A stretch of 64,000 nucleotides of DNA from Hemiscyllium ocellatum (Eukaryota). This document shows, one piece after another, positions 29,795-59,203 of this stretch. The translations under genes were made by a program, and so were the position numbers. The notes under the pieces are model-generated. The model saw only the letters and a program-made list of their open reading frames with translations, did not search any database and was not told the origin of the DNA. Numbering within the stretch: position 1 is the first letter of the stretch; every line of letters begins with the position of its first letter. The stretch is from assembly GCF_020745735.1 (NCBI RefSeq), contig NC_083435.1, positions 8,897,201 to 8,961,200 of the forward strand. The letters run 5' to 3'.

Positions 29795-30366
29795 TCACTT
29801 TGAGGTCAGGGAGATCCCGAGGTCCCACCACTTTCCAAAATTCAGGTCCAAACTGGAGCAGATTCTCAGAAACTGGTTTTCATAAAATAGTTGAAAGAAA
29901 GGAAAAAGTTTCCCAGTGAATTTATTCCCAGGGAAGGTGTGGAGTTGGGACTTGGTGTCCACGTTGTAAAATGAAACTGTCCCAGATTCATAACTGAGAT
30001 AAACTCCCACCTTCCTGGGGATCTGACTGACAGGGAGAGGGGATTGAGGAGAGGAGTTTATATAAAACCGATCCTCAAACCATTCAATGATCCAGAATCC
30101 ATCCTCTGGTATCACACTGACGCCGCTCTTCCTCTCCACAGACTCTGAGGCTACTCCCAGACTCCAGCACCGATTCCCTTCCACCTCCACCTCCCAGTAA
30201 TGTCTCCCCGATGTGAATCCCTGGGATCCCAGGACACAGAGATGGTCTGTAAACCTCTTTTTGGTGTCAGGGAGATACTTCCGGGTCCCAGTCAATTTCA
30301 AACTCTTTAGATCCTCAGAGACCTCGAGCCAGGGACTCGCTGTTTGCACATCCAGGGTCACAGAGA
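29795..30366 (-). CDS. Terminal B30.2 (PRY-SPRY) exon of butyrophilin-like gene B
   Basis: Acceptor ttctctgtttttttttctcccag|, phase 1, open frame VSVTLDVQTASPWLEVSEDLK...GRHYWEVEV...WSLGV...KLFPFF to TGA. Confidence 0.92.
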
Positions 30367-30520
30367 CTGGGAGAAAAAAAAACAGAGAATTAGTGTGTAT
30401 CAATATCAGAGGCTTGGGTTTTATTTGGGGACTAATGATTGTGAGGGGACTCACTGAAGCTTTCAGGAGGGCATTTGTCTCATGGGGGTCATCTGGTGGG
30501 GGGGGGGCAATGAGGTGATG

Positions 30521-30836
30521 GTGGCACAGTGGCACAGTGGTTAGCACTATTGCCTCACAGCGCCAGAGACCCGGGTTCAATTCCCACCTCAGACGGGAAC
30601 TCTGTGGGGAGTTTGCACATTCTCCCCGTGTCTGTGTGGGTTTCCTCAGGGTGCTCTGGTTTCCTCCCACAGTTCAAAAATGTTCAGGTTAGGTGAATTG
30701 GCCATGCTAAATTGCCCGTAGTGTTAGGTGCAGGGGTAAATGTAGGGGAATGGGTATGGGTGGGTGTGCTCCGGCAGGTCGGATGTGGACTTGTTGGGCC
30801 AAAGGGCCTGTTTCTACGCTGTGGGTAATCTAATTT
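30521..30836 (+). mobile_element. HE1-type SINE in the last intron of gene B
   Basis: gtggcacagtggttagcact...ggttcaattcc...gagtttgcacattctcccc...taatctaat. Confidence 0.9.
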
Positions 30837-30969
30837 AATGCTTGGGAATATGGGACGGATACTTATGTATCAGGAATGGGACTCACTGGGGGATCAGGGA
30901 TTTGTCAATGGGTCAGGGCAGGGGTAGAGGGTCACGTTTGAGATTGGTGAAAATGAATTAGGAGCAGTT

Positions 30970-32140
30970 TTGTTGTGGTATCCTTTAAACCCACTGACTC
31001 CCACAGTTACCTTGACTCTATATCCTTGCACCCTGCTTCCTGTAAGGATTCTATCCTATTCTCCCACTTTCTTCATCTCTGTCCCATATGTTCTGATGAT
31101 TCCACCTTCCACTGGTGTGTCTCCGAAATGACCGAGTTTTCTTTCGACAGAGAAATCCCCCACTTCAGCAATGTCCAACCCATCTCTCATTTTTCTGCCC
31201 TCACTCCGTCCCTCATTCCCAGAACAGCAATCGTTCTTGTCCTCACTTTCTATCACACCTTCCAAAGGCTCATCCTCTGCTTTTTCTGTCATTTCCAACC
31301 AGATGCCATCACCAAACCCACTGACAGCATTCCGCAGGGACCATTTGTCTGGGACACCTGGTCCACTCCTCCATCATCTCCTAATGGTTTCTCACTGCTC
31401 CATGTTGCCTTCCCATGCAATCATAAAAGGTGTAACATTAACCTCCTCCCTCTTCGCTGTCCAAGGCCCCAAATACAGCCTACTTTCCTCTCCCTATAAC
31501 TCAAGCCCTCCAGTCTTGGTAACATAATTGCAAATCTGTTTTGTACCCTTTCCAGTTTAATAACATCTTTCCTATAGCAGGACAATCCAGAATTGCATGT
31601 AGTACTCCAAATGTGACCTCACCAATGTCTTACACAGCTGTAACATGACATTCCAATTCCTGTACTCAATGCTCAGACCAATGAAAGCAAGCACGCCAAA
31701 CGCCTCCTTCACCACGCTCTCTACCTGTGGTGTCACTTTCAAAAAACTATGTACCTGAACCCCTGGGTCACTCTGTTTGACAATACTCCCCAGGGCCCTA
31801 CTATTAACCCAATAAGTTTTGCCCTGGTTTGTCTTATGAAAATGCAACACCTCACATTTATCTTCACTAAACTCCATCTGCTGTTCCTCAGCCCACTGGC
31901 CCAGTTGATCAAGATCTCATTGTACGCTCAGATAACTTTCTTCATTGTCCACTAAACCATCAATTTTGGTTTTATCATAAACTTACTAACTATGCCTCCT
32001 ATATTCTCATCCAAATTGTTTATTTAAATAATGAACAGCAGTGGACCCAGTATTGATCCTTGCCTTACACTGCTGGTCAAGTCTGAATGACAACCCTTCA
32101 TCATCACCCTCTGTCTCTTACCGTCAAACCAATTGGTCCT
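30970..32140. mobile_element. Decayed Penelope fragment (+, about 30970-31500) abutting a CR1 RT/3' fragment (-, 31500-32140)
   Basis: FKPTDSHSYLD...HPASCKDSI (PLE thumb); KCEVLHF...LVRSHLEY (CR1). Confidence 0.75.
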
Positions 32141-33197
32141 GAGTAGTTCTCCACCTGAGATCCCAAACTGGGCTCCTGTTGGTGTTTGAGCTCAGTTTGT
32201 ATTTTACACTGACCTCAAGGACAGTAACCAGTGGTTTTAATTATGGACGTGTCTGCAGTGTGGCTGTACTGAGATTTGAGTCACTAAAACTGACCCAGAG
32301 GAAACAGACACTGATCGAAAGCAAGATGTTACTGCTTGAAGAACCTGACAGTTATCCAGAGGAACATGACACTCCACAGCAAAACATCAAAAGGATGTAC
32401 TGGTTTGATTTCTTGCCCATGAACTGAACTGTGTGAACAGCAGGAGATCACTTGGAGCTGAACTGTTCCTGCAATTCCAGAGGATGCTGCTCAGCGCTGA
32501 CCCAGACTGTCCAATGAACAGCTGAACACAACTCTTGTTATTGACTGCAACTAATACATTCCCCTCTGTGAAATACAGACCCACCCTCCTACTCAGCAAA
32601 CCTGCAAGAACTGTATAATTCCTGAACTGGGGAAACTATCAAGCAGTCTTGGGTCTGATTTTACAGGACTGATCAGTACTGACACTCTGAGACATCAACC
32701 CACACAACTACCACAAATGACAATGATCCCAAAGACCATGAGCTGGTAAAACAGAACCTTCTTCCCCACTCTCACTCAGCTCATCGTCAGAAACCAAGAC
32801 CAACAAGGTGTCTCAGTTTCATGACCTCACCATGTCCAGAAACCTGGATGTATCAAGAAACGCATTCCATAAGTGTCACACAATTAAACATTCTTGCAAT
32901 ACAATGCCTTTATAAGTGTGAATAGATAGATAAATACTCAATGGATTTATGAAATATATAGGGAATATATATTTAATGTATAAAATATAGATATTGTGGC
33001 AACTTTTATGTTCATATGAAATAAAGTCTTTCAGCAAAAATGCCAAGTAAAATTAAATTCCTCAATTTAGAAAATGAAAGATTGTTCCAGTGAAATGAAC
33101 CTTTGCTTAATTTACACAAAATATTTAGGAAATATACTTCAATATTTCTGAACAATAGGGTCAGTTTAATTGAATTGTAACACGTTTCTGTACTTAC

Positions 33198-33224
33198 CAC
33201 AATCTAGTTCTGTGTTGTCGTATC
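33198..33224 (-). CDS. 27-bp cytoplasmic micro-exon of gene B (xYDNTELDC)
   Basis: ttttttcttgttccatgcag|GATACGACAACACAGAACTAGATTGTG|gtaagta. Strong splice sites, phase 1-1, open frame, with BTN-typical size and position. Confidence 0.7.
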
Positions 33225-33774
33225 CTGCATGGAACAAGAAAAATTTAATATCTCACATTTCTTACTGACTGCCTATCAAAGCTATCAGCTGTAAGCTCAC
33301 ACATTGGCAACTAGTAACGCCCTCCCTCAGACTGCACCATCACTGCTGGGCTCGAATCCACCCATAAACAACATGGAACTAATCGCCACAGGACATTTTA
33401 ACCCTTCACCATTCAATATTGCTGCTTAGTTTCAGGTCAAACCCTCTGCCACCATTATTTCTTGGACAGCAGCTGTTGGTGATGATTCGGTTACTTCCAT
33501 ATGTATCTCATTTCACAGAAGAACAGAAACGACTGAAGAAACTCAGCAAGTCTGGCAGCAACTGTGGAAAGAGGATCAAGTTAACCTTTCCAGTCTGATT
33601 TCACCCTTCTTTGGAGGACACACATTCCAAATAAAAATCACAATGAACATTGTTTCTCTTTCTCTACAGACTGATAGATCTGTTGGGTTTCTCCAGCATT
33701 TTCTGTTTTCATTTCAGATCTCCAACATCTGCAGTACTTTGCTTCTATTACGGCAGCTGTCAACCAACTTCAGA

Positions 33775-34420
33775 GTCATCGAGTCATACAGCATGGAAAC
33801 AGACCCTTCAGTCCAGCCAGTCCATGCTGAGCATAATCCCAAACTACCCTAGTCCCTGGTGGGACAGGAGATGTGTTGATGGTATTCTGGGGGCTGGCCC
33901 CTATCCCTCCAAACATTTCTTATTCATGTACCTATCTAAATCTCCTTTAAATGCTCTAACTATATCTGAGTCTACCATTTCTTCTGGAAGTTCATTCCAC
34001 ACACGGACCACTCTCTGTTAAAAACATTTGCTCTTCGTTTTTTTTAATCATTCCCCTCTCATCTTAAAAAAAATGCCCCCAGTCTGGAAATGCCCCCCCT
34101 TAGGGAAAAGACACCTGCCATTCGCCTTACCTAAAGCCCTCATTATCTTATGAACCTCTATAAGGTCACTCCTCAACCTCTGACCCTCCAGTGAAAAATG
34201 TCCCAACCTATCCAGCCTCTCCCCATAGCTCAAGCCCTCTATTACCTCTAGCAACATCCTGGTAAATCTCTTCTGCGCCCTCTCCAGGTGAATAATTCCC
34301 TTCCTATAGCAGGGTGACCAGAATGGAACACAGTACTCCAGAAGAGACCTCACTAATGTCCTGCACAACCTCAACATAATGTCCCAACTCCGATACACAA
34401 AGATCTGAGCAATGAAGGCA
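33775..34420 (-). mobile_element. CR1 3' end
   Basis: LVRSLLEYCVPFWSP...RSDLIEVHKI, plus the catagagtcatacagc 3' UTR. Confidence 0.85.
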
Positions 34421-34849
34421 AGCTTATTTTTTGTTTGTTTTTGTTTCTTCACTTCATAAAGATTGTTCTGAAATAACTCCACAGAGGCAGGTATCACCTC
34501 AGCAAGTTTCCCTCGATTTATACATGAACAGTCCTTGACTTTAATATTGTCTCATTCTGAGTCAGGTACCCAAGTGTCCATTTCTCTGACACTCACCCTT
34601 CAGGGCTCCCTGACTGAATCAAATCAACATCCCCAACTGATATTCTGAGGTCTACCTGGCTGACCTTCTGATAATCACCAAATGTTCCTTTTTATATTTG
34701 ACTGGATTATTAATTATGGACTGAAATGAAAAAAAAAATGCTTTAAAACCAGGGATTAGTGGAGGATTGCTGATTGTTTTTGAAAGCAAACGCAGACCCT
34801 CATTAGAAGTGCTGCCGTCCCTTATTACCTCAGTTCACCTCCGCCATCC

Positions 34850-36800
34850 TGTCAGCGGTCTGCATCCCAGCCCATGTAGAAGTGAAGAGTGCCCTGGATG
34901 AAATATACAACGCTACAAATTCACTTGAGACGGAATGTCACAAGGCCATATTCACTGTGACCAGTGACTATAACACAACCAACCTCAAGAATGTGCCTCC
35001 AGAATACCATCAACAATACCATCCTGTCCCACCAGGGGGCCAAGCATCCTTGACCACTGCTACACAACCATCAAAGACGCCTACATCTCCATACACAGTC
35101 CAAATTTTGAAAAATCAGATCACAATGCTATGCTCCTCCTCCCTGCTTACAAGCAGAAGTTGAAATGTGAGGACACAGTATAAAAGATAGCACCGATCTG
35201 GTCTGAGGCAACAGAACAGCTCCTGCAGGACTATCTGGAATCAGTGGGCTGGTCCGTATTGAAGAATTCAGTGGCTAACCAAGACAAGTATCCCACCACG
35301 GACACAGATGTCATGAGCAGGTGTGCAGAGAACTGCATGACAAAGAAGTCGATCCATATGTTCCCCAACCAGAAACCATGGGTGAACCGTGAAATCCATT
35401 GCCAACTGCAGAACATACATAAGGTGTTCAAGTCAGATGGTGCTGACCTTTACAGGAAATCCAGGTTTGACCTCGGTAAGGCCATTAGAAATGCCATTAG
35501 GCAATATCAGACCATGTTAGAGACCCAAACTAATCATGTTGACACCTGCCATCTGTGGCAAGGCCCACATGACATAAAGGGTTAAAAAATGAAACAGAAC
35601 AGATAAAAGCACATCCCTCCCTGATGCGCGAAACATTTTTCACAATCATTTTGAACGCAAAGTCGGTGAAAGGAACGCGATGTCTCCTGCCCTGACAGCC
35701 TCAGGTACCCACGCTCACTGCTGCAGAGATTAGATCGCCTTCCTGAGAGTGAACCTACAGAAAAGGACTGGCCCAGATGCAGGCCCTGGCCATGGACTCA
35801 ATTCCTGTGTGGACTAGCTGGTGGGAGTATTCACTGACATCTTTAACATCTCCTTACTATGACGTGAAGTCTCCGACTGCTTCAAGAAGCCCACTATCAT
35901 CCTGGGGGTGCCAAAGAAAAATCATGCAGCATGACTCAATGACTACAGCCATGGCTCTGGCCTGCAGAATCATGAAGTGCTTTGAGAGGTTAATCACAGA
36001 TCATATCAGCCCCAGCCTCCCAGCCTGCCATGATCCTTTGCAATTTGCCTTCTGGGGCAACAGGTCCACGGCAGATGACAACTTCCTAACCCTACACTCA
36101 TCCCTGGAACAGCTGGACAATAAGGATACCTAAGGCTTCTACTTATTCATTACAGCACCGCCTTCAATACTATAATTCCAAACAAACTAAGCTTCAAATT
36201 CCCAGACCTAGGTCTGTACTTCCCTCCTGTGTAACTGGATCTTCAGCTTTCTGATCCACAGACTGTAATCAGTGAAGATAGCTAACTGCACTTCCTCCAC
36301 GACAATTCTCAACACTGGTGATCTGCGTACTCAGTCCTCTACAGTACTCCCTGACTCGACGGCCAAATTTCATCTGAACTCTATCTAGAAGTTTGTTGAC
36401 GACACCACAGTTGTAGACTGGATATCAAATAATGACAAATCAGAATACGTGAAAGACATTTAGTGCTTGGTGATTTCATATGAATCATGGTGGTAGAAAG
36501 AGAACAATCTCTCCCTCAACGTCAGCAAAACTAAAGAGTTGATCATCGACTTCAGCAAGCTATAAGGAGGACATGGCCCAATCTACATCAATGGCACTGA
36601 AGTGGAGATTGTCGAGAATGTCAAGTTCCTTGGAATGGCGATAACCAACAATCTGTCTTGATCCACCCAGACTGATGTGAAGGTCAGGAAGGTACAACAA
36701 TGCCTCTTCTTCCTCAGGAGGCTAAGGAAATGTGACATGTCCATAAGGCTCCCATCAACTTTATGGATTCGATCTGGATGCATCACGACTTGGCATGGTA
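34850..36800 (+). mobile_element. Decayed Rex1/Babar LINE
   Basis: ALDEIYNA, FPNQKPWVN, YRKSRFDL, PLQFAF..NRSTAD and KVQQCLFFLRRLRK. Confidence 0.8.
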
Positions 36801-36804
36801 ACTA

Positions 36805-37020
36805 TTCTGTTGTGGTTCTGTTCGCCGAGCTGGGAGTTTTTGTTGCAAATATTTCGTCCCCTGTCTAGGTGACATCCTCAATGCTTGGGAGCCTCCTGTG
36901 AAGCGCTTCTGTGATGTTTCCTCCGGCATTTATTGTGGCTTGTCTCTGCCGCTTCCGGTTGTCAGTTGCTGTCCGCTGCAGTGGCCGGTATATTGGGTCC
37001 AGGTCGATGTGTTTGTTGAT
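36805..37020 (-). mobile_element. Penelope pLTR fragment (same family as 14191)
   Basis: gttgtggttctgttcgccgagctggga...tttcgtcccctgtctaggtgacatcctca. Confidence 0.85.
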
Positions 37021-37044
37021 ATCCCTCCCCACCCCCACCCCCCC

Positions 37045-37975
37045 CTCCGCAGGAATTCAGCTCTTTCGTCCATGTTTGAACTAAGGCTAGAATGAAGTCA
37101 GGAGCTGAGTGTCCCTGGCGAAACTCAAACTGGGCATCACTGAGCAGGGGTTGCTTGATAGCATTGTTGATGACCCCTTCCATCTCTTTACTGATGATGG
37201 AGCGTGGATAGATTGGGCGGTGATTGGCCGGGTTGGATTTGTCCTGTTTTTTATGTTCAGGATGTACCTGGGCAATTTTCCCCATTGTTGAGTAGATGCC
37301 AGTGTTGTAACTGTACTGGAAGAGTTTGGCTAGGGCAGTGGTACGTTCTGGAGCACATGTCTTCAGTTCTATTGCTGGGATGTTATCAGGGCCCATAGCC
37401 TTTGCCGTATCCAGCTGTTTCTGATATCACATGGAGTGAATCGAATTGACTGGATACTGGTATATGTGATGCTGGGGACCACTGGAGGAGCCCAAGATGG
37501 GTCATCTTCTTCTGACTGAAATTTGCTGTGAAAGCTTCAGCCTTGTCTTTTGCTCTGATGTGCTGGGCTCCTCCACCATTGAGGATGGGGATATTTGTGG
37601 AGCCTCCTCCAACGAGTTGGTTAATTGTCCACCACAATTCACAACTTGATGTGGAAGGACGGCTGAGCTTAGGTCGGATCTGTTGGTTGTGGGATCACTT
37701 AGCTCTGTCTATCACTTGCTGTTTATGCCATTTGCCACGCAAGTAGTCCTGTTTGGTAGCTTCACCAGGTTGACACCTCATCTTCAGATATTCTGGTGCT
37801 ACTCCTGGCATGCCCTCCTGCACTCCCCATCAAACCAGGGTTGATCCCCTGCCTTGATGGTAATGGTTGAGTGGGGGATATGCCAGGCCATGAGGTTACA
37901 GATTGTGCTGGAGTACAGTTCTGCTGCTGCTGATGGATGCCCAGTCTTGAGCTGCTAGATCGGTTTGAAGTCTGT
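37045..37975 (-). mobile_element. CR1-group LINE RT fragment (second family)
   Basis: GPDNIPA..LKTCAPE...LAKLFQYSY...KSNPANHRPI...QFEFRQGHS. Confidence 0.75.
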
Positions 37976-37984
37976 TCCATTTCG

Positions 37985-38328
37985 CACAATGAGGGGCATG
38001 GATAGAGTGAATAGCCAAGGCCTTTTTACATGGGTAGGGGATTCCAAAATCAGAGTATCTAGGTTTAATGTTAGAGGGGAAAGATTTAAAAGAGGCCTGA
38101 GGGGCATCTCTTTCATGCAGAAGGTGGTGTCTGCATGGTACAAGCTGCCAGAGGAAGTGGTGGAGGTTTGAACATACAACATTTAAAGGCATCTGGATGG
38201 GTACATGAATAGGAAAGGTTTAGATAACTCTGGTCGAAGTGCTGGCAAATGGAACTAGATTGGTTGGCATGGATGAGTTGGACTGAAAGGTCTGTTTCCA
38301 TGTTGTACACCTCTATGACTCTATGTCA
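37985..38328 (+). mobile_element. CR1 3' end with (ctctatga)n tail
   Basis: FMQKVVSAWYKLPEEVVE, then ctctatgactctatg. Confidence 0.8.
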
Positions 38329-40888: not shown

Positions 40889-40899
40889 CTCTGTCACTA

Positions 40900-42699: not shown

Positions 42700-43116
42700 A
42701 GAATCCTGAAATGGTTCTGAAATAGCTTACCTTCCAAAGTGCAGAACCACTCCAGTTCTGAAAGACAGGAACACAGGAATGTGTTAGTGAGAGAGATCCT
42801 GCAGCTACTGCCACACTCTATAACAGCAACATCAGAGACACAAACAGAACACAGATCAGACTTGACCAGCAGAACCATCAGCTGGGATCAGAACAACATT
42901 TTAAAATTCTAAATCTCAACTTGACAATCTTGATAGAGTTTATAATTGACGTTTCTTTCTCCTCATATTCTTGTGATAATATTTTTGATGGATTTCAACA
43001 AAACTGGTCAGCTGAACAATAGCCAGAGAAACATGGCAAATGGTTCATGCCACCAGCAACAACAGCTCAAAACATTTTCCAATGGGAATGGATAGGCCAA
43101 TGTCCATCTTTGTTAC

Positions 43117-44419: not shown

Positions 44420-47400
44420 TTGCCTTCCCTTTTATTGGCTGAACCTGGATGCAAGCTTTGTGTGACTTATAGTCATAGAGACATTCAGCACCATCCACTG
44501 CATGAAAAACTTGCCCCTCAGGTACTTTTTAAATCTTTCCTCTCCTACCTTAAACCTAAACCCTCTGATTTTGAACTCCCCACCCTAGGGAAAAAAACCT
44601 TGTCTATTTACCCTATTTATGCCCGTCATGATTTTCTAACCTCTATAAGGTCACCCCTCAACCTCCAACACACCAGAAAAATGGCCCAGCCTATTCAGAC
44701 TCTCCCTATAAAACATCAAACCCCGGGTCCAGGCAATGGCCTTGTAAACTATTTCTGCATCCTTTCAAGTTTAACAACATCCTTCTGATAGAGGAGGGAC
44801 TAGAATTGTAGCAGCATTCCTAAAGTGGCCTCACCAATGTCCTATACAACTGCAACATGACATTCCAACTCCTATAATCAATATTATGACCAACTTATTT
44901 ACCTCCGACTCCCCATTCAAGGAACTATGCACCTGCAATCCAAGGTCTCTTTGTTCAGCATCACTCCCCCACACCCTACCAATCACTGTACAGCCCTGCC
45001 CTAGTTTGTTCAGCATCACTCCCTCATGCCCTACCATTCACTGTACAGCCCTGCCCTAGTTTGTTCAGCAACACTCCCCCACGCCCTACCATTCACTGTA
45101 CAGCCCTGCCCTAGTTTGTACAGCATCACTCCCCCACGCCCTACCATTCACTGTACAGCCCTGCCCTAGTTTGTTCAGTATCACTCCCCGATGCCCTACC
45201 ATCCACTGTACAGCCATACCCTAGTTTGTTCAGCATCACTCTCCCACGCCCTACCATTCACTGTACAGCCCTGTCCTAGTTTGTTCAGCAACGCTCCCTC
45301 ATGTCCTACCATTCACTGTACATCCCTGTCCTAGTTTGTTCAGCCACACTCCCCCTCGCCCTACCATTCACTGTACAGCCCTGTCCTAGTTTGTTCAGCA
45401 TCACTCCCCCACGCCCTACCATTCACTGTACAGCCCTGTCCTAGTTTGTTCAGCATCACTCTCCCACGCCCTACCATTCACTGTATAGCCCTGCCCTAGT
45501 TTGTTCAGTAACACTCCCCCACGCCCGACTATTCACTGTACAGCCCTGCCCTAGTTTGTTCAGCATCACTCCCCGATGCCCTACCATTCACTGTACATCC
45601 CTGTCCTAGTTTGTTCAGCCACACTCCCCCACGCCCTACCATTCACTGTACAGCCCTGCCCTAGTTTGTTCAGCATCACTCCCCCACGCCCTACCATTCA
45701 CTGTACAGCCCTGCCCTAGTTTGTTCAGCATCACTCCCCGATGCCCTACCATTCACTGTACAGCCCTGCCCTAGTTTGTTCAGCCACACTCCCCACGCCC
45801 TACCATTCACTGTACAGCCCTGTCCTAGTTTGTTCAGCAACGCTCCCTCATGTCCTACCATTCACTGTACATCCCTGTCCTAGTTTGTTCAGCCACACTC
45901 CCCCTCGCCCTACCATTCACTGTACAACCCTGTCCTAGTTTGTTCAGCATCACTCCCCCACGCCCTACCATTCACTGTACAGCCCTGTCCTAGTTTGTTC
46001 AGCATCACTCTCCCACGCCCTACCATTCACTGTATAGCCCTGCCCTAGTTTGTTCAGTAACACTCCCCCACGCCCTACTATTCACTGTACAGCCCTGCCC
46101 TAGTTTGTTCAGCATCACTCCCCGATGCCCTACCATTCACTGTACAGCCATACCCTAGTTTGTTCAGCATCACTCCCCCACGCCCTACCATTCACTGTAC
46201 AGCCCTGCCCTAGTTTGTTCAGCATCACTCCCCCATGCCCTACCATTCACTGTATAGCCCTGCCCTAGTTTGTTCAGCATCACTCCCCGATGCCCTACCA
46301 TTCACTGTACAGCCCTGCCCTAGTTTGTTCAGCCACACTCCCCCAAGCCCTACCATTCACAGTACAGCCCTGTCCTAGTTTGTTCAGCAACGCTCCCTCA
46401 TGCCCTACCATTCACTGTACATCCCTGTCCTAGTTTGTTCAGCCACACTCCCCCACGCCCTACCATTCACTGTACAGCCCTGTCCTAGTTTGTTCAGCAT
46501 CACTCCCTCATGCCCTACCATTCACTGTACAGCCCTGTCCGAGTTTGTTCAGCATCACTCCCCCATGCCCTGCCATTCACTGTATAGCCCTGCCCTAGTT
46601 TGTTCAGTAACACTCCCCCACGCCCTACCATTCACTGTACAGCCCTGCCCTAGTTTGTTCAGCATCACTCCCCAACGCTCTACCATTCACTGTACAGCCA
46701 TACCCTAGTTTGTTCAGCATCACTCCCCCACGCCCTACCATTCACTGTACAGCCCTGCCCTAGTTTGTTCAGCATCACTCCCCGATGCCCTACCATTCAC
46801 TGTACAGCCCTGCCCTAGTTTGTTCAGCATCACTCCCCCAAGCCCTACCATTCACTGTACAGCCCTGCCCTAGTTTGTTCAGCATCACTCCCCGATGCCC
46901 TACCATTCACTGTACAGCCCTGCCCTAGTTTGTTCAGCCACACTCCCCCAAGCCCTACCATTCACTGTACAGCCCTGTCCTAGTTTGTTCAGCAACGCTC
47001 CCTCATGCTCTACCATTCACTGTACAGCCCTGTCCTAGTTTGTTCAGCCACACTCCCCCACGCCCTACCATTCACTGTACAGCCCTGTCCTAGTTTGTTC
47101 AGCATCACTCCCCCACGCCCTACCATTCACTGTACAGCCCTGCCCTATTTTGTACAGCATCACTCCCCCATGCCCTACCATTCACTGTACAGCCCTGCCC
47201 TAGTTTGTTCAGCCACACTCCCCCTCACCCTACCATTCACTGTACAGCCCTGTCCTAGTTTGTTCAGCATCACTCCCCCACGCCCTACCATTCACTGTAC
47301 AGCCCTGCCCTATTTTGTACAGCATCACTCCCCCATGCCCTACCATTCACTGTACAGCCCTGCCCTAGTTTGTTCAGCCACACTCCCCCTCACCCTACCA

Positions 47401-48560
47401 TTCACTGTACAGCCCTGTCCTAGTTTGTTCAGCATCACTCCCCCACGCCCTACCATTCACTGTACAGCCCTGCCCTAGTTTGTTCAGCATCACTCTCCCA
47501 CGCCCTACCATTCACTGTATAGCCCTGCCCTAGTTTGTTCAGTAACACTCCCCCACGCCCTACTATTCACTGTACAGCCCTGCCCTAGTTTGTTCAGCAT
47601 CACTCCCCGATGCCCTACCATTCACTGTACAGCCATACCCTAGTTTGTTCAGCATCACTCCCCCACGCCCTACCATTCACTGTACAGCCCTGCCCTAGTT
47701 TGTTCAGCATCACTCCCCCATGCCCTACCATTCACTGTATAGCCCTGCCCTAGTTTGTTCAGCATCACTCCCCGATGCCCTACCATTCACTGTACAGCCC
47801 TGCCCTAGTTTGTTCAGCCACACTCCCCCAAGCCCTACCATTCACAGTACAGCCCTGTCCTAGTTTGTTCAGCAATGCTCCCTCATGCCCTACCATTCAC
47901 TGTACATCCCTGTCCTAGTTTGTTCAGCCACACTCCCCCACGCCCTACCATTCACTGTACAGCCCTGTCCTAGTTTGTTCAGCATCACTCCCCCACGCCC
48001 TACTATTCACTGTACAGCCCTGCCCTAGTTTGTCTTCCCAAAATGCAACATGTCCTATTCCTCCAAATTAAACTCCACCTGCCACCCTTCAGCCCATTGA
48101 TCAACGTCCTGTTGACCTCAGAGATAACCTTCTTCACTGTTCTCGTCACAATCTATTTTGGTGTCATCCGCAAACTTACTAACCACGACCTCCTCTATTC
48201 ACATCCAAATCATTTATATAAATAATGAAAAACAGTGGACCCAGCACTGATCCTTGTGGCACACCACCAGTCACAAGTCTCCAGTCTGAAAAACATCCCT
48301 CCATCACCACTCTTTATCACCTACCTTCAAGTCAGTTTTCTATCCAATGGCTAGCTCTCCCTGGATTACATGTGACCTCATCTTACTCATGAGTCTGCCA
48401 TGCAGGACCTTGTCAAACATGTTGCTGAAGTTCATATCAACAATTCTCACTGCTCTTCTTCATCACTTCTTCAAAATCTCGATCAAGTTACTGAGAGATG
48501 ATTTCCCATGTACAAAGCCACGCTGACTATCCCTAATCAGTCCTTGTCCTTCCAAGTGCA
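44420..48560 (-). mobile_element. CR1 RT/3' fragment split by an internal tandem amplification
   Basis: CR1 sequence runs to 44950 (QRDLGLQVHSSL) and resumes at 48034 (caaaatgcaacatgtcc) in register. Confidence 0.85.
44950..48033. repeat. 55-bp minisatellite, about 56 copies (3.1 kb), CR1-derived
   Basis: Unit tttgttcagcatcactcccccacgccctaccattcactgtacagccctgccctag; period 55 (ctag at 45001 and 45056). Confidence 0.97.
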
Positions 48561-49192: not shown

Positions 49193-49399
49193 AAATGTCT
49201 TTTAAATGCTGTAAATATGCCTGCATCCACCACTTCCTCAGGATACTTATTCAACACACAAACCACTGTCTGTGTAAAATATTTTCCCCATAAGTCTTTT
49301 TTTTAATCTCTCTCCTCTCAACTCAAAAATGCGCCTCCTAGTCATGACAACTACCAATAACCCTCTCATTACTTTATAAACTCTATCAGATCATGTCTC

Positions 49400-50740: not shown

Positions 50741-50779
50741 GGGACCCTTTAGTGTGTAATATATATGGAGCATTTTGGA

Positions 50780-51720: not shown

Positions 51721-52341
51721 TGTCCCAAGGATGGTATCATTAGATGGGACATTTTTTAGCTGGGGAATTCAATGAATCTGGAATCATACAAAACGTTAAA
51801 TTTAGCTGATAATGATCATGAAGTTCTGATTGTTTTACTAATATCCTTCAGGAAAGGAAATCGATCAGACCCACAGTGACGCGATTGACTTTGACCTGCC
51901 TTCTGACATGGCCTCGGAAGCCACTCAGTTATATCAAACTGTGACAGAAAGAAAAAGCCTGTGGATGTACCCACACCACCCAGACCAGAGTGGATCAAGA
52001 AAGCATCTCACTACCACCTTCTCAATGACAGTTATGGATGTGCAATAAATTCTGGCCAAGCCAGTGATACACATGATGGAAAATACATTTTAGAAAGGTC
52101 TCATTCCTCCCCAGAGATTGATTAGATAATGTTTCATTCTTTATCAGAGAAGCCGTGGTTAAATAAGTGATTATTCCTAAGCAGACAAAAATGAACTATC
52201 ATTTTCACTCTACATTCTAATTCATATTAATTTTAGATGGTTAAAAATCTGCTACAGTTACAATTAATTTCAATTTATCTACTGTTTCTCCTCAATTTAC
52301 AAACATAAATCTCATCTTTCGATGGCCTGTTTTGCTCCTAC

Positions 52342-52470
52342 CTTTAATCATTTTGTCCTCTTTTCTGTGGATCATTACATCAATAGTAATTGCCATAATT
52401 ACAAGGCTGACAAACACCCAGAAAATTACCAGCCAGATATTGGTCGCATTGACTTTGGCGAAGAACTCAT
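52342..52470 (-). CDS. Transmembrane exon of butyrophilin-like gene B
   Basis: ttcttttttttaacctcag|ATGAG...ATTAAAG|gtagga; 129 bp, phase 1-1. Encodes DEFFAKVNATNIWLVIFWVFVSLVIMAITIDVMIHRKEDKMIK. Confidence 0.88.
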
Positions 52471-52953
52471 CTGAGGTTAAAAAAAAGAAAGGAATTAGTA
52501 TCTGATTTGTGATGTCCAAAGCAGTGAGTTTTCCTCCCAGATAACGTCAGTTAATCAATTCTTACCATAATCTCTGTTGCTGATACAGGTAAATAATACC
52601 AATAACAAGAAGGGTCTCTATTGATTGGATCACTTGGATTCCAGATGAAGTTCTGAATAAACATTTGTTTCTCAGAATAACACTCAGCCAAAACCACAAT
52701 ACTGACTGTCCTTGGTCCTATTCTCAACCCAGTGGCCACAGCTGGAATATGAAATGTGGACATTGGGTGAGGACACATCAGGCCCAGCTTTAGTGTTGTG
52801 GATGGTCAATTCACTTCAGGTTTAAATATGAAAAGCAGCCCATTGGGTGTGGTCCAGAGAAGAATCAATGCTCATGATCCACACCCAGTCTGAGTTATTG
52901 TCTTCAGGAGAGCAGAAATGTTACTCATCAAATTGTTACCGAACTCAACCTAC

Positions 52954-53238
52954 CTGATATCTGGAGATGAGCCACTTGTCCTTTGCTCAATAACTGGTTT
53001 TCCATGAAACATGAAAACCTGTTTACAGAATCACTTGTGACATCAATATGACTCTGGACGGTGATGAGGCCTGTGGAGTCCTGAATGAATTCTGTTTCAG
53101 ACTGTGCTGTCACATCTTCTCCTTTCCCATTTACCCAGTGAATCAGTGGCTCAGGATACCATCCGTCTGATTGACACACAACACAAAGTCCTCCTTTGCT
53201 ACTTTCCTCCACGTGAACCCAAGGCCGGTGTCCAAACT
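52954..53238 (-). CDS. IgC (B7/BTN C2-type) exon of gene B
   Basis: ctaattgcag|...TCAG|gtaggt; 285 bp, phase 1-1. FGHRPWVHV...VVCQSDGWYPEPLIHW...FSCFMEN...HLQIS carries the BTN motif C.S.GWYPEP. Confidence 0.92.
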
Positions 53239-53384
53239 CTGCAATTAGGGTTTAATCAGTCATTCAACTCATATTCAGTTTAAGTTGTCAAATGTTTAAT
53301 TTAACAGCACATAATCATTTCAGTCCAGAATGGCAGTGGCAGGAGGAGTTGGTAGTGGTGGTGTTGGGACTGGAAACCAGAGCA

Positions 53385-56255
53385 ATAGGTCGGCATGTGA
53401 AGTGATTGAGGAAAAGGTAGACGTTAAGTCAAGTCAGTCTAGTAGGAAGAACAGGCAGGACCTGGTTAATGAACACATCAAGACTGGTAATCTGATGTAT
53501 ATTTCATGTAAGGAGTATAACAGGTAAGGTAAATGAGCCTAGATCTGGATTAGTTCATGAAACAACAATTACAGAGAGCAGCCATTACAGAGACTTGATT
53601 GAGAGAAAGGTGGGACTGTCAGCTCAACATTCCAGGGTTTAGATATTTCAGGCATGATAAAGAGGGATGGAAAAGGGATGGGCAAGTTGCATGACTTATT
53701 AAGGAGAATGTCAAAGCTGCACTAAGAGAGGACATCATGGAGGGATCATCCAGTGAGGCCATATGAGTAGAAATCAGGAATAAGAAAGCTTCAATCACTA
53801 CCAAAGGCCTCCCAATAGTCAGTGGGAGATAAAGGAACAGGTATGTAAGCAGATCATGGAAAGGTATCAAAACAACAGAGTTGTTGGGGAGAGTAATTTT
53901 AACTTCTCCAATATTGATTGGGACTCCGTTAATGCCAGGGCAGAATTTGTTTGGAGGCTTTCTTGAAACAATATGTAGATAGTCCAATAAGGGGAGGGGT
54001 CAAATTAGACTTTGCACTGGGGAATGAGCCTGGCCAGGTGATTGAAGTTTCAGTGGGGTACAGTTTGGGAACAGTGATCATAATTTTCTAAGTTTTAAGA
54101 TAGTTACAGAAAAAATAGTATTGGTCCTTGGGGAAAACTGGCAAAGTGAAGGAACGTTAATTGCAACAGTATTAGGTAGGAACTAGACAAATTAGAATGG
54201 AGTGGCTGTTTGAGGGTAAATCTACTTCAAACATGTGGGAGTCTTTGAAAGGTCAGGTCTAGCATGTTTCTGTCAGGATGAAAGATAAGGTTGGCAAGAT
54301 TCAGGAACCCTGGATGACAAAAGAGATTGAAAGTTTAGTCAAACATAAAAAGGAAGCATACATAAGGTTTAGGAACCTGTAATTAGAGGATCCCTTGAGG
54401 AATATAACGGCAGAAGAAAAGAACTTTAACAGGGAATTATGAGGGCTAAAAGGGCCATGAAATGGCCTTGGCCAGTTGAATTAAGGAGAATCCCAAGGCA
54501 TTTTGTCTCCAAGGAGCAAGCGGGTTGCTAGGGGAACCCAAGGACAAAGGAGGGAACATATGCATGGAGCTCCAGAAAGTGGTCCTTAAAAAGTACCTTG
54601 TGTTATCACTTACCAAGGAGAAGGACACAAGATGATGGTAAAATTAGGATGCAGTCTGTTGCTATTCTTCCATTATTAAAAAGGTCGTGGTGTTGGAAAA
54701 TATTAAAACAGGTAAGTCCCCAGGGCCTGATGGGATCTATCAGAGGATACTATGAGAAACAAGGGAGGAGATTGCTGGGGCTTTGATAACAATCTTTATA
54801 TCCTCTTTAGCCATCGATGAAGCCCCAGAAGACCTGGAGAAAAGTCAATAATTATTCCTTTGTTTACAAAAGGTAACAGCGATAGACCCAGACATTATAG
54901 GTCAGTGAGCCTTACATCAGAGGTAGGGAAATTAGTGGAGAAGATTCTTAGAAACAGAATTTACTCGCATTAGGGATAGTCAGCATAGCTTTGTGCAGGG
55001 GAGGTCTTATCTCACAAAGTTGATTGAGTTTTCTGGGGGAGTGATGAAGATGATTGATGAAGATGGGGCAGTGGATGTTGTCTACATGGATTTTATGAAA
55101 ACATCTGACAAGGTCGCTCATGGTAAGCTGGTCCAGAAGATTAAGTCACATGGGATCTATGAGAGGTTGGTAAATTGGAGACAAAATTGGCTTGGTCATA
55201 GAAGATAGAGGGTAATTGTGGAGGGGTATACTTCTGACTGAAGACCTGTGACCAGTAGTATTCCACAAGAATCAGTGCTGGGACCTCTGTTGCTTGTAAT
55301 ACAGATAAATGACAATGATGAAAATGTAAATGTTCTGATTAGTAAGTTTATAGACAATGCAAAAATTGGTGGAGTTATGAATAGTGAGGAAGGTTGTCAA
55401 AGGATTCAGCAGGATATACAGGGAGATCAGTTGGAAAGTTGAGTGGAAAAATGGCAGGTGGAGCTTAATTCAGAAAATTGTGAGATGATGCATTTTGGAA
55501 TGCCAAATGCAAGAGGAAAGTATCCAATAAATGATGGAATCCATCGGAATATTGATATGTAGAGATCTTGGGTAGCAGTCCAAAGCTCCCTGAAAGGGCC
55601 AACACAAGTCAATAAGGTAGTAAAGAAGATGTACAGCATAATTGGGACTTTGAATATAAAAGTTGGCAAGTCATGTTACAGCTGTTTAAACTTTACTTAG
55701 GCCACATGTCGAGTATTGTATGCAGTTCTGGTCACTAGACCACAGAAAGGATGTGGAGACTTTGGACAGGATACAAAAGAAGCTCATCAGGATGTTGATT
55801 GGATTAGAGTGCATTAGCTAAAAGGAGGGGTTAGACAAATGTAGATTGTTGTTGCTAGAGCAGTGGAGGCTGAGAGGCAATCTGATCAAAATATATAAAA
55901 CCAAGTGAGGTGATGGATAGGGTGGAGAGTTGGATTCTTTTTCTGACGGGGGTGGAAATGTCAAAAACAAGGGAGCATAGGTTTAAGATGAGAGGGGGAA
56001 AAGTTTAAAGGAGATGTGCGAGGCGTTTTTTTAACACAGACCTGGGAGTAGATACCTGGAATGCAATGCCAGGGAGGTGGAAGGAGCAGGTATCACAGCG
56101 ATATTTAAGAGGCAGTTAGACAGATACGTGAACAGGTAGGGAATAAAGGGATAAGGATCAGGTGCAGATGGGATTAGTTTAGAATGGCATCATGGTCAGC
56201 ATAAACATGGTGGGCCGAAGGGCATGTTTCTGGGCAATACTGTTCTATGTTCTAC
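53385..56255 (+). mobile_element. Decayed near-complete CR1 ORF2 with 3' tail, in the IgV-IgC intron
   Basis: EN, RT (VDVVYMDF...DKVAH, PQESVLGPLL) and the tail gttctatgttcta. Confidence 0.88.
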
Positions 56256-56884
56256 GTTTTCATATGAAACCTACTGTTCCTTCCTTGACTACCTAAATAT
56301 TGAAATCAGAGGAGGGTAATTTTAACTGTTGGTGCTAATATTAAAACAGGCAATATCGGAATGGTGCATAATGCTTCAATCTCTCCAATCATAACCAGTT
56401 CTCTCCCTGGTTTCTCAGCCAGGAGGTGATCACTGAATATGAATCAGATCATTTACCCTATTCTGAATCATTCTGGACTCCTTCATCTCAACTTCTCTCA
56501 AACTCTTTTTCAATAACTGCTACCGTGATATACAACTTTCTGTTTCATTAAATTATTACTCTCTTGTAGCTCCCTGTTCCATTTCAGATCATATCAAACA
56601 CACCAACAAAGACAGCCCAAAGGTTGGATGGTGGAAGACTGTCTGCTTGACTGAGAGTGAAAACCCATTCATCTCGAAACCATGACCACATGACTAAAAA
56701 CCAAAAGGTCATTGCCAAGTGTTGCCAAACTCCTTCCAGAGACCCTCTTCACCACTCGCCATCTTTCCCCAGCTTCAGATCCAACGTTAGTGTAGTTTGT
56801 ACCCCCTACATCAGAGAGTGCTCAAACTGCTTCAATCTATTTTTGGTGACTTCAGATTTTCCACCAATTGAGAAACTGATCCTT

Positions 56885-57625
56885 GAACTGGAGTTCACTG
56901 AGAGCAGTCACTGCTCCCGGAGCTGGGGCGTACTGAAAGATTCCCAATTCCTGGAGCTGGGGTTTACTGAGAGATTAGGAGAATGTGAGGAGTGCAGATG
57001 CTGGAGATTAGAGTCAAGATTAGAGTGGTGCTGGAAAAGAACAGTAATTCAGGCAGCATCCGAGGAGCAGGAAAATTGACGTTCTGGGCAAAAGCCTGTC
57101 ATCAGGAATCCACTGAGTGATTCCCTGCTCCTAGAGCTGGGGTTCACTGTCTGAGTCCCTGCTTCATCAGCTGGGATTCACTGTGTGATTCACTGCTCCC
57201 AGAGCTGGGGATCACTGAAAGATTCCCAGTTCCTGGAGCTGGGTCCACTGAAAGAGTCATTGCTTCTGGAGCTGGGGTTCACTGAGAGATTCCATGCTCC
57301 TGGAGCTAGGTGCACTGAGAGATTCCCAGTTCCTGGTGCTGCGGTTCACTGAGAGATTCCCAGCTCCCAGAGCTGGGATTCACTGAGAGATTCCCAGATC
57401 CTGGAGCTGAAGGTCACTGAGAGATTCCCAGCTCCTGGAGCTGTGGTTCACTGAGAGATTCCCAGCTCCCGTAACCGAGCGCACTTAGAGATTCTCAGCT
57501 CCCGGAGCCGGGTCACTGAGAGATTCCCAGATCCCGGAGCTGGGTCACTGAGAGATTCCCAGCTCCCTAAGCCGGGTGTACTGAGAGTAATTATTCCTGG
57601 ACCTGGGGTTCACTGAGAGATTGTG
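56885..57625. repeat. 34-bp minisatellite (about 18 copies) with a Penelope pLTR inserted at about 56978-57110
   Basis: Unit gagattcccagctcctggagctggggttcactga; period 34 at 57317/57351/57385/57419. Confidence 0.9.
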
Positions 57626-58404
57626 AACACATACAGATTCCCTGCTGTCAGCCTCTTTGAGCCCTTGTATTTATATTCTCCTCCTTGTCTTTTGCCACCC
57701 ATGCAAAACTGAGGCAGTGTTTTAGGCTGGTCTTGTTCAGCTGGCCAACACACATGCTGCAGCAGTTAGTCCTCTTGTAGTTGTTTGACTGTTGACCTTC
57801 CAACCTGTGAGTCTTACACATCACACTGTAGGTGGCTGCAATATGGCCAGATTTACCCGCCCACAGACTCATCAACCTTTGAGCTGCCCAGTTGTGACAG
57901 AATAACCCCAGCAGCTCCTAATTTCCCTAACTGCAGGTCTGCAGGGAGGGTGAAGGATTGCTTCCTTATCATCCACCTTCAAAATCACCTTAACTCATCA
58001 TATTTCACTGTCTGCCAAGGTAGGATGCAAGCGCAGGCTCCCATGATTCTCCCTGGGTCGCAATCCAGTGATATTACCTTTCCTAAAAAGGAGCCAAACT
58101 GTATACTTTACTCCAGATGTAGCCTCACAATGCCCTGTACAATTATAGAAACCATCTCCACTTCATATTTCATTTTCCTTTGCAGTAAACAACATTCAGT
58201 TTGTCTTCCGAATCACCTGCTGTACCTGCATTCTATCATTTCCAGGTTGAACTATCGATACTAACATCTCGAATAGTCCAGCATATGGTTTGTTATTTTC
58301 ATTTTCCATTAGCATGCAGCTTATTATTTGTCATTTATGATTTTAAAAATGTTCTAATCCAAATATTCAGCGACAAGTAGCAGTTTACAATGAGAAAGAC
58401 CAAC

Positions 58405-58752
58405 CTTCAACTTTCAGATCTATCACTGCTTGATCAAGGTGTGTTTTGGAGTCAATGTAACACGTGTAACTCCCTTTGTCTGATCCTTTTATCTTCTTCA
58501 GTTTCAGAGAAGCATTTCCATGGGGAAACTCATCTTTAAACAGTTCTGTTCTCCCTTGATAATCTTTGTCCTGTACATCAGGCCGATCCTGTCCTCCAGT
58601 GTATAAATGAACTGGTGAAGCTGAATGTGTAGTAAACCATCGAACCTCTAAGGTGTTCAGAGATATAGCTGGGACCACTTGGCACTCTAGTACAACATCT
58701 TCACCCACAGAGACTGTGATGGGATCATCTGGTGTAAACACGTGGAATATCT
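58405..58752 (-). CDS. IgV exon of butyrophilin-like gene B
   Basis: tttgtattttgccag|...GTTGAAG|gttggt; 348 bp, phase 1-1. IFHVFTPDDPITVSVGEDVVLEC...EVRWF...VHLY..GQD...QDKDYQGRTELF...GNASLKL..IKGSDKGSYTC is a classic BTN/B7 IgV. Confidence 0.95.
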
Positions 58753-59155
58753 CTGGCAAAATACAAAATAGTAATCAAGTCTGTACTCTGATTGGAGGAA
58801 CAGATTTAAACTTCAGGAAGACATTTTAAAGGACACAGATAAAATTCTGTTTTTTGCCTGACTAATTCCTTCAAAGATTATGAGTTTGAAAGGCACGTAA
58901 TAAAAGAAACAACAGTTGTATAAAGCTTACTATATCTATACCCTTTTGGATTATTCTCACACTGATTGGTTCATTGAACAGCTTATATGAATAGATTGGG
59001 TGACAAAAGGGAAATTCTTTCCAGTAAGCTGAGATTTATAGTGTCACAATGGTTAATTATATTCTCTTTCAAAGGTTATTGTGGGTTTGGGAAAGCTGTG
59101 AAAAAAGTGAAAGATCATTTGTCTTTTTAATTTCAATGACAACTTTGTGAGTTAC

Positions 59156-59203
59156 CAAAGGAAATGAATCATGATGTACTATGATGAGCAACATTGTTTG
59201 CAT
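59156..59203 (-). CDS. Candidate leader (signal peptide) exon of gene B (MQTMLLIIVHHDSFPL)
   Basis: ATG, a short hydrophobic run and donor ttg|gtaact, 400 bp upstream of IgV. It ends in phase 0, whereas the IgV acceptor needs phase 1. Confidence 0.35.

What the first reader, a model, noticed from the sequence alone, without database searches (positions are those of the whole stretch)
29795..59203. Complete shark butyrophilin-like receptor (IgV-IgC-TM-micro-exon-B30.2) reconstructed across about 29 kb of repeats
Seen in sequence: five minus-strand exons (348, 285, 129, 27 and 572 bp) have GT-AG ends and phase-1 junctions. They splice into one open frame with BTN-type IgV (GNASL, Y.C), IgC (C.SDGWYPEP), a TM helix and B30.2. 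Established: this is the architecture of mammalian BTN/BTNL proteins, which select and activate gamma-delta T cells via IgV and sense phosphoantigen via B30.2 (BTN3A1). Inference: this is an intact BTN-like gene in the oldest lineage with TCR-based immunity, and a candidate ligand for shark gamma-delta TCRs or NAR-TCR.
Basis: partly seen in the sequence, partly recalled or inferred. Interest (0 to 1): 0.72.

Follow-up and report, generated by a model that had tools for sequence, protein, structure and literature searches.

The report
Ordinary shark butyrophilin-like gene, nearly complete
This is a real, intact-looking butyrophilin-family immune gene of the epaulette shark, one of dozens in a cluster on its MHC chromosome. 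It belongs to a family already annotated and published for this species, and no RNA evidence could be obtained that its B30.2 exon is spliced to the Ig exons.

Summary
The four large minus-strand exons exist exactly as described: 348, 285, 129 and 572 bp, with AG/GT ends, phase 1, and one open frame. Each domain is closest to butyrophilins: V-set, the BTN-type C2-set_3, and PRY/SPRY.

Three corrections:
- The gene is not complete in the window. Its signal-peptide exon lies 50-137 bases beyond the window end.
- There are two conserved 27-bp micro-exons (42757-42731 and 33224-33198), not one.
- A short alternative last exon (51777-51740) would give a 295-aa form without B30.2. That is the only form annotated for the bamboo-shark ortholog.

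The full model has 7 coding exons, spans about 34.3 kb and encodes 491 aa.

The genome is Hemiscyllium ocellatum. The gene sits in a large BTN/TRIM cluster on the chromosome that carries all the strong MHC class I hits. An annotated paralog 115 kb away has the same layout, with an even longer interval (35 kb) between the TM and B30.2 exons. The window holds no TRIM exons.

Splicing of the B30.2 exon to the Ig exons is inferred only. A role as a gamma-delta or NAR-TCR ligand is untested speculation. Other windows of this scan noted the same cluster. Low novelty.

The parts
58405..58752 (-). IgV exon (348 bp, phase 1-1)
   Evidence: AG acceptor and GT donor. Pfam V-set 1.4e-12. Best solved-structure relatives are MOG, BTNL8 and BTN3A1 at about 1e-21 to 1e-22. 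95% identical to C. plagiosum P0125.
52954..53238 (-). IgC exon (285 bp, phase 1-1)
   Evidence: Pfam C2-set_3 (BTN3A2-like Ig-C) 3e-21. BTN3A2, BTN3A1 and BTN1A1 are the top solved structures. 92% identical to P0125.
52342..52470 (-). Transmembrane exon (129 bp), ending in the conserved HRKEDKMIK
   Evidence: A hydrophobic stretch (IWLVIFWVFVSLVIMAITIDVMI) can be read directly. 91% identical to P0125.
51740..51777 (-). Alternative short terminal exon (DSLNSPAKKCPI, then stop) that would give a 295-aa form without B30.2
   Evidence: Matches the tail of C. plagiosum P0125 (80% over 15 aa). AG acceptor in phase 1. No AATAAA or ATTAAA within 1.5 kb downstream.
42731..42757 (-). Micro-exon 1 (27 bp, ELEWFCTLE)
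   Evidence: Acceptor ...TCTTTCAG, donor GTAAGC. 27/27 nt identical to the micro-exon of the annotated paralog P0115, within introns that are about 77% identical. The motif is conserved across elasmobranch BTNs.
33198..33224 (-). Micro-exon 2 (27 bp, GYDNTELDC)
   Evidence: Acceptor ...CCATGCAG, donor GTAAGT. 9/9 aa identical to the residues just before the B30.2 in C. plagiosum P0001.
29795..30366 (-). B30.2 (PRY/SPRY) terminal exon, 572 bp including the stop
   Evidence: PRY 1.1e-16 and SPRY 1.5e-22. BTN2A2 and BTN3 are the top solved structures at 1e-44 to 1e-45. 93% identical to P0001, and this is P0001's best match in the whole genome.
29634..29658 (-). Polyadenylation-like signals (ATTAAA, AATAAA) 137-161 nt after the B30.2 stop
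   Evidence: Motif scan.
44950..48033 (.). 55-bp x 56 minisatellite in the intron between the TM exon and micro-exon 1
   Evidence: Tandem Repeats Finder score 5048. Strong negative GC skew.

Best explanation
A butyrophilin-family gene of the epaulette shark (Hemiscyllium ocellatum), on the minus strand of G000:C113 at about 8,926,995-8,961,337. It has seven coding exons: leader (just outside the window), IgV, IgC, TM, two 27-bp juxtamembrane micro-exons, and B30.2. They span about 34.3 kb and encode a 491-aa type I membrane protein. The protein would carry an extracellular IgV-IgC pair, one TM helix, an 18-residue cysteine-containing juxtamembrane linker and a cytoplasmic PRY/SPRY domain. An alternative short exon 565 bp after the TM exon could instead yield a 295-aa form without B30.2. 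By analogy with mammalian BTN/BTNL proteins, it would act as a cell-surface immunoglobulin-superfamily ligand or regulator, with its B30.2 domain binding a cytoplasmic partner. Shown: the exons, their frames and splice signals, the domain identities, orthology to bamboo-shark models, the cluster and the MHC-chromosome context. Inferred: that all seven exons are joined in one mRNA, that the gene is expressed, and any function.
For: Exon boundaries, phases and the single open frame are. The leader exon 50 bases beyond the window end is 97% identical to P0125 residues 1-29. Both micro-exons have consensus splice sites and match the subfamily pattern HRKEDKxIK-ELQLFCTLE-GYDEVEIDY-VSVTLD, which is seen in sharks, skates and rays. 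TRIM proteins instead precede VSVTLD with ...PFPVWREMLDVINP. Micro-exon 1 is 27/27 identical to that of paralog P0115, against about 77% identity in the aligned introns. The annotated same-genome paralog P0115 has the same layout with a 35-kb interval between TM and B30.2, so 22 kb here is normal. The window holds no RING, B-box or coiled-coil exons and no other minus-strand B30.2. The B30.2 frame is open over 190 codons, shares 93% identity and the same unusual C-terminal tail with the C. plagiosum ortholog, and is followed by AATAAA/ATTAAA at +137 to +169.
Against: There is no RNA evidence. The putative RNA runs of this species hold only 6-12% of the sampled words, which is no more than runs of other species hold. 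No protein matching this locus appeared among proteins of 160-820 aa in the protein database, although paralogs from the same genome did. In C. plagiosum the ortholog is annotated as two models: P0125 (IgV-IgC-TM plus a short tail) and P0001 (the B30.2 joined to unrelated A2M-like exons). No full-length ortholog of this particular lineage is annotated in any species. dN/dS against the paralog is about 1 for the IgC and B30.2 exons, which does not demonstrate constraint.
Confidence: 0.62

Rival explanations
1. The gene makes only the short IgV-IgC-TM protein (295 aa, BTN3A2-like or MOG-like), ending at the alternative exon 51777-51740. The micro-exons and the B30.2 exon downstream would then be an unused remnant, or be used only rarely or by another transcript.
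For: The C. plagiosum ortholog P0125 is annotated in exactly this form, and its 15-residue tail maps to 51787-51743. The orthologous B30.2 sits in a separate model, P0001. No full-length ortholog was found.
Against: There is no polyadenylation signal within 1.5 kb of the short exon's stop, whereas the B30.2 exon has three within 170 nt. Micro-exon 1 is perfectly conserved and all downstream splice sites are intact. The B30.2 frame is open in two species. P0001 is evidently chimeric, since its first 235 residues map 16.5 Mb away in this genome, so the split annotation may be an assembly or modelling artefact.
Confidence: 0.25
2. A silent or recently inactivated paralog: intact by sequence but not expressed, one of many in a fast-turnover cluster.
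For: No matching protein was found in the database, although neighbouring paralogs of the same genome are annotated. RNA runs show only background word shares. The cluster contains paralogous exons with stops. dN/dS is about 1 for IgC and B30.2.
Against: All seven exons, all splice sites and the start codon are intact. Identity to the bamboo-shark ortholog is 91-97% across every exon. The available RNA runs are small, so absence of words there is not evidence of silence.
Confidence: 0.1
3. The B30.2 exon belongs to a separate TRIM gene.
For: The B30.2 sequence is as similar to shark TRIM (A33-like/NF7-like) B30.2 domains (78%) as to BTN ones (76-78%). In a tree of 146 B30.2 domains the two kinds are intermingled and poorly resolved, and the nearest neighbour is a TRIM.
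Against: tblastn with two full-length TRIMs finds no RING, B-box or coiled-coil exon anywhere in the window. The exon directly upstream in the ortholog's model is the BTN-type micro-exon GYDNTELDC, not the TRIM-type ...WREMLDVINP.
Confidence: 0.02

Closest known systems
Hemiscyllium ocellatum 'butyrophilin subfamily 1 member A1-like' (P0115, 469 aa), an annotated paralog 115 kb away on the same chromosome
   Same: Same exon plan: leader, IgV, IgC, TM, two 27-bp micro-exons, B30.2. Same juxtamembrane motif, with micro-exon 1 identical at 27/27 nt. The introns are collinear and partly alignable, and the last introns are very long.
   Different: IgV is 88-90%, IgC 86-87% and TM 75-80% identical, but B30.2 only 69-71%. 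The window gene also has a candidate alternative terminal exon that does not align with the paralog.
Chiloscyllium plagiosum P0125 ('BTN3A2-like', 295 aa) and P0001 (438 aa, 'uncharacterized')
   Same: These are orthologs of the two halves of the gene. For P0125: leader 97%, IgV 95%, IgC 92%, TM 91%. For P0001: micro-exon 2 9/9 and B30.2 93%. In both cases the best whole-genome match lies in this window.
   Different: They are annotated as two genes. P0001's N-terminal 235 residues (A2M bait-region-like) map 16.5 Mb away in this genome, so that model looks chimeric.
Human BTN3A1, BTN2A1, BTN1A1 and MOG
   Same: IgV-IgC-TM-short exons-B30.2 architecture. All three domains have BTN proteins (and MOG for IgV) as their best solved-structure relatives. 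The gene lies on the MHC chromosome (PMC12841164).
   Different: There is no one-to-one orthology to any mammalian subfamily, because the scores for BTN1, BTN2, BTN3 and BTNL are close together. The juxtamembrane region is only 18 residues. The phosphoantigen-pocket residues were not examined. Function is untested.
Shark TRIM proteins ('zinc-binding protein A33-like', 'nuclear factor 7-like')
   Same: Their B30.2 domains are 74-78% identical to this one and intermingle with BTN B30.2 domains in the tree. They lie in the same chromosomal cluster.
   Different: No RING, B-box or coiled-coil exons are present here, and the sequence preceding the B30.2 exon is different.

Membership tests
Butyrophilin (BTN/BTNL) family | N-terminal signal peptide followed by an IgV (V-set) domain of the BTN/MOG type | tested here: met
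   V-set 1.4e-12. MOG, BTNL8 and BTN3A1 score 78-82 bits, against 57-63 bits for B7-H4, single-domain CD276 and Skint1, and about 38 bits for PD-L1. The leader exon lies just outside the window.
Butyrophilin (BTN/BTNL) family | Membrane-proximal IgC domain of the BTN C2-set type | tested here: met
   PF22705 C2-set_3 3e-21. BTN3A2, BTN3A1 and BTN1A1 are the best solved structures, and CD80 and ICOSL score about 1e-3 only.
Butyrophilin (BTN/BTNL) family | Single transmembrane helix followed by short in-phase juxtamembrane exons | tested here: met
   A hydrophobic stretch of about 23 residues can be read in the 129-bp exon (no TM predictor was run). There are two 27-bp phase-1 micro-exons with consensus splice sites, conserved in elasmobranch BTNs.
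Butyrophilin (BTN/BTNL) family | C-terminal cytoplasmic B30.2 (PRY/SPRY) domain | tested here: met
   PRY 1.1e-16 and SPRY 1.5e-22. BTN2A2 and BTN3 are the top solved structures.
Butyrophilin (BTN/BTNL) family | All domains encoded in one mRNA and protein | not testable with these tools
The RNA runs hold only background word shares. The claim is supported only indirectly, by the paralog's layout and micro-exon conservation.
Butyrophilin (BTN/BTNL) family | Location on the MHC chromosome or its paralogous region (typical, not strictly defining) | tested here: met
   All 64 PF00129 (MHC_I) matches at E<=1e-10 lie on C113, the window's chromosome, at 24-46 Mb. This agrees with PMC12841164.
BTN3A1-type phosphoantigen sensor | Basic phosphoantigen-binding pocket in the B30.2 domain, and activation of gamma-delta T cells | not tested
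Function needs experiments.
TRIM (RING-B-box-coiled-coil-B30.2) | RING, B-box and coiled-coil exons upstream of the B30.2 exon | tested here: not met
   tblastn with the TRIMs P0005 and P0056 hits only the two B30.2 exons of the window.
Classical B7 (CD80/CD86/PD-L/ICOSL) | IgV-IgC ectodomain closest to B7 members, and no B30.2 | tested here: not met
   B7 members score far below BTN and MOG for both Ig domains. A B30.2 exon with BTN-type micro-exons lies downstream.

The most novel reading that the evidence does not exclude
One shark gene makes both a B30.2-bearing and a B30.2-less butyrophilin by choosing between a nearby terminal exon and a distal block of micro-exons plus B30.2. In humans the separate genes BTN3A1 and BTN3A2 fill these two roles. 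The cysteine-containing juxtamembrane micro-exon pair (ELQLFCTLE / GYDEVEIDY), conserved from sharks to rays, would be an ancient signalling or dimerisation hinge that couples B30.2 to the ectodomain.
Probability: 0.25. Interest if true: 0.45.

Novelty: new member of a known kind. Interest (0 to 1): 0.25.

Why it matters
The result adds a corrected, coordinate-level model of one more butyrophilin paralog to a family already annotated in this shark and reported across jawed vertebrates. It could serve anyone cataloguing the elasmobranch BTN/TRIM cluster on the MHC chromosome, or choosing candidates for gamma-delta T-cell ligand studies. It does not open a new question by itself. Two by-products are mildly useful. 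The first is the strongly conserved juxtamembrane micro-exon pair that separates BTN-linked from TRIM-linked B30.2 exons when the B30.2 sequence itself cannot. The second is evidence that gene models in this cluster (for example C. plagiosum P0001) can be chimeric.

Tried and rejected
- **Read laying (window:29600-33400, runs X1, X11, X22, X9):** No read or contig evidence was obtained. The local dN/dS calculation masked the overlapping codons.
- **The look-up of sequencing runs:** the only candidate RNA runs of this species (X1, X11) hold 6-12% of the words. That is the same as runs of other organisms, so it says nothing about expression.
- **The look-up of encoding contigs for P0125, P0001 and P0124:** no DNA was returned, so no orthologous intron comparison or cross-species dN/dS was possible.
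- **Leader-exon candidates inside the window:** the ATG at 59203 gives a phase-0 donor. An ORF at 59456-59393 has a hydrophobic core and a phase-1 donor (GTATCT), but its similarity is at noise level. Both were dropped once the conserved leader was found just outside the window.
- **B30.2 phylogeny:** too poorly resolved (17 of 133 branches supported) to assign the exon to BTN or TRIM.
- **dN/dS against the paralog:** about 0.4 for IgV and about 1 for IgC and B30.2, which is not decisive for or against constraint.
- **Third protein-database search, structure prediction and complex prediction:** not run, because none could change the verdict.
Full report
**Observation**

- IgV, 58752-58405 (348 bp)
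- IgC, 53238-52954 (285 bp)
- TM, 52470-52342 (129 bp)
- B30.2, 30366-29795 (572 bp, ending in TGA)

Every acceptor ends in AG and every internal donor begins with GT. All junctions are phase 1, and the spliced sequence is one open frame. Pfam gives V-set 1.4e-12, C2-set_3 ('Butyrophilin subfamily 3 member A2-like Ig-C') 3e-21, PRY 1.1e-16 and SPRY 1.5e-22. This is not a chance pattern.

**Family placement**

Each domain was searched on its own against solved structures, and each is closest to butyrophilins.
- IgV: MOG, BTNL8 and BTN3A1 score 78-82 bits. B7-H4, single-domain CD276 and Skint1 score 57-63 bits, and PD-L1 about 38 bits. The higher CD276 total comes from two matched stretches in the four-Ig form.
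- IgC: BTN3A2, BTN3A1 and BTN1A1 are best, and CD80 and ICOSL are barely significant.
- B30.2: BTN2A2 and BTN3 score 1e-44 to 1e-45, just ahead of TRIM21 and pyrin.

**Which genome**

The window is G000:C113:8897201-8961200. C113 is 49,326,738 bases long. That is exactly the contig length recorded for Hemiscyllium ocellatum proteins in the protein database. The H. ocellatum protein P0115 maps at 100% identity to C113:8782359-8782871. The genome is therefore the epaulette shark.

**Corrections to the gene model**

1. The leader exon is missing from the finding. Neither homolog leaders nor an ORF and donor scan found a credible leader inside the window. A whole-genome search with the bamboo-shark ortholog P0125 found residues 1-29 at 97% identity at C113:8961251-8961337, minus strand. 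The DNA there reads ATG...CTG TCA G|GTAAGC: 88 bp, phase 1, encoding MRHFNQFLPTLQGRHFGLVLFLGFHTVLS.

2. There are two 27-bp micro-exons, not one.
   - 42757-42731 encodes ELEWFCTLE (acceptor ...TCTTTCAG, donor GTAAGC).
   - 33224-33198 encodes GYDNTELDC (acceptor ...CCATGCAG, donor GTAAGT).

   With all seven exons the CDS is 1476 nt, giving 491 aa with a single terminal stop.

3. A 38-nt exon at 51777-51740, 565 bp after the TM exon, has a phase-1 AG acceptor and encodes DSLNSPAKKCPI followed by a stop. It matches the tail of P0125 and would give a 295-aa protein without B30.2.

**Does the B30.2 exon belong to this gene?**

In favour:
- tblastn with two full-length shark TRIMs finds no RING, B-box or coiled-coil exon in the window. 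The only other B30.2 exon (15956-16519) is on the opposite strand.
- Across 50 or more elasmobranch BTN proteins of this subfamily, the sequence between the TM and B30.2 is a conserved HRKEDKxIK-ELQLFCTLE-GYDEVEIDY-VSVTLD. TRIM proteins reach VSVTLD through ...PFPVWREMLDVINP. The window has both BTN-type micro-exons, in order, between the TM and B30.2 exons.
- The annotated paralog P0115, 115 kb away, has the identical plan. Its IgV is at 8,737,692, its TM at about 8,747,300 and its B30.2 at 8,782,359, so the last interval is 35 kb. The 22 kb here is therefore normal.
- The introns of the two paralogs align collinearly at about 77-78% identity, whereas micro-exon 1 is 27/27 identical. Micro-exon 2 is 21/27 identical with both splice sites kept.
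- The B30.2 frame is open over 190 codons. It shares 93% identity and the same unusual tail (…SSLDLNFGKWWDLGISLTS) with C. plagiosum P0001, and this window is P0001's best match in the whole genome (next best 77%).
- Polyadenylation-like signals follow the B30.2 stop at +137, +156 and +169. None occurs within 1.5 kb of the short exon's stop.

Against:
- In C. plagiosum the ortholog is split into P0125 (IgV-IgC-TM plus short tail) and P0001 (micro-exon 2 plus B30.2, preceded by 235 residues with an A2M bait-region domain). Those 235 residues map to C113:25.47-25.49 Mb in this genome, 16.5 Mb away, and two of the exons there carry stops. P0001 therefore looks like a chimeric model rather than evidence of a different gene structure.
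- No protein matching this locus appeared among database proteins of 160-509 aa (B30.2 query) or 258-820 aa (Ig query), although paralogs from the same genome did.
- No full-length ortholog of this specific lineage is annotated in any species.
- A tree of 146 shark B30.2 domains is poorly resolved and mixes BTN-linked and TRIM-linked domains. The nearest neighbour of the ortholog's B30.2 is a TRIM.
- dN/dS against P0115 is 0.41 for IgV, 1.1 for IgC, 0.57 for TM and 1.0 for B30.2 (with codons overlapping 30178-30217 masked). That fits a fast-evolving immune family but does not prove constraint.

**RNA evidence**

None could be obtained. The two run searches found whole-genome runs of the species that hold the stretch (shares 0.54-0.91). 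The only putative RNA runs hold shares of 0.06-0.12, no higher than runs of other organisms. From then on I worked beside those places. No reference spanning them was sent to any search tool, and P0001 served as a proxy in the local tree.

**Context**

Whole-genome searches show dozens of related IgV, IgC and B30.2 exons on C113 between about 4.6 and 16 Mb, some with stops. All 64 strong MHC class I matches also lie on C113, at 24-46 Mb. This agrees with PMC12841164. That paper reports butyrophilins across all jawed vertebrates and names H. ocellatum among the cartilaginous fishes whose BTN genes share a chromosome with MHC class I. Other windows of this scan noted the same cluster.

**Mechanism and verdict**

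The most likely reading (about 0.6) is an expressed, full-length type I butyrophilin of 491 aa, possibly with a B30.2-less splice variant. By analogy with mammalian BTN/BTNL proteins it would act as a surface ligand or regulator with a cytoplasmic B30.2 sensor or adaptor domain.

The rivals are:
- a short-form-only gene (about 0.25)
- a silent paralog (about 0.1)
- a TRIM-owned B30.2 exon (about 0.02)

The proposed gamma-delta or NAR-TCR ligand role is untested. The kind of gene is already known in this species and in elasmobranchs generally. This locus is at most an additional, possibly unannotated, member of it. Interest is low.

Noticed in passing
window 15956-16519 (+), with a possible micro-exon at 13336-13386 (+): A second B30.2 exon lies on the opposite strand, tail-to-tail with the gene studied. 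It is 92% identical to C. plagiosum 'BTN3A1-like' P0067, a different BTN subfamily whose juxtamembrane motif is ELELHKTFIE-CEWKRICDCE. Its Ig exons are not in the window.
   Followed up: partly
G000:C113:25473026-25491642 (loci L001-L004): The first 235 residues of C. plagiosum P0001 (A2M bait-region-like) map here, 16.5 Mb from the window, at 71-85% identity. Two of the exons carry stops. P0001 is therefore probably a chimeric gene model or an assembly artefact.
   Followed up: partly
window 44950-48033: A 3.1-kb minisatellite (55-bp unit, 56 copies, 91% matches) with strong negative GC skew sits in the intron between the TM exon and micro-exon 1. It produces long spurious ORFs (PYHSLYSP...). 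A second array of 34-bp units lies at 57111-57622 in the IgV-IgC intron.
   Followed up: no
window exons versus G000:C113:8737692-8782871 (loci L006-L012): Between the window gene and paralog P0115, synonymous divergence in the Ig exons (dS 0.05-0.12) is well below the intron mismatch (about 22%). The B30.2 exons, by contrast, are only 69% identical in protein. This suggests exon-focused gene conversion of the Ig exons and independent shuffling or turnover of the B30.2 exons.
   Followed up: partly
shark proteins P0001-P0153 (tree of 146 B30.2 domains): B30.2 domains attached to BTN and to TRIM proteins are intermingled, with at least 6-7 switches forced by supported branches. The residues just upstream of VSVTLD separate the two kinds cleanly. 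This hints at repeated B30.2 exon exchange between BTN and TRIM genes in the elasmobranch cluster.
   Followed up: partly
G000:C113, 24-46 Mb: All 64 strong MHC class I (PF00129) matches of the genome lie on the window's chromosome, in blocks at about 24-28, 35-37 and 44-46 Mb. The BTN/TRIM cluster occupies about 4.6-16 Mb.
   Followed up: partly
window 5584-6009 (-), 20139-20948 (-): Weak, sub-threshold matches to DDE_Tnp_4 and RVT_1, which are decayed transposon and retroelement remnants. The other long ORFs of the window have no Pfam match.
   Followed up: yes
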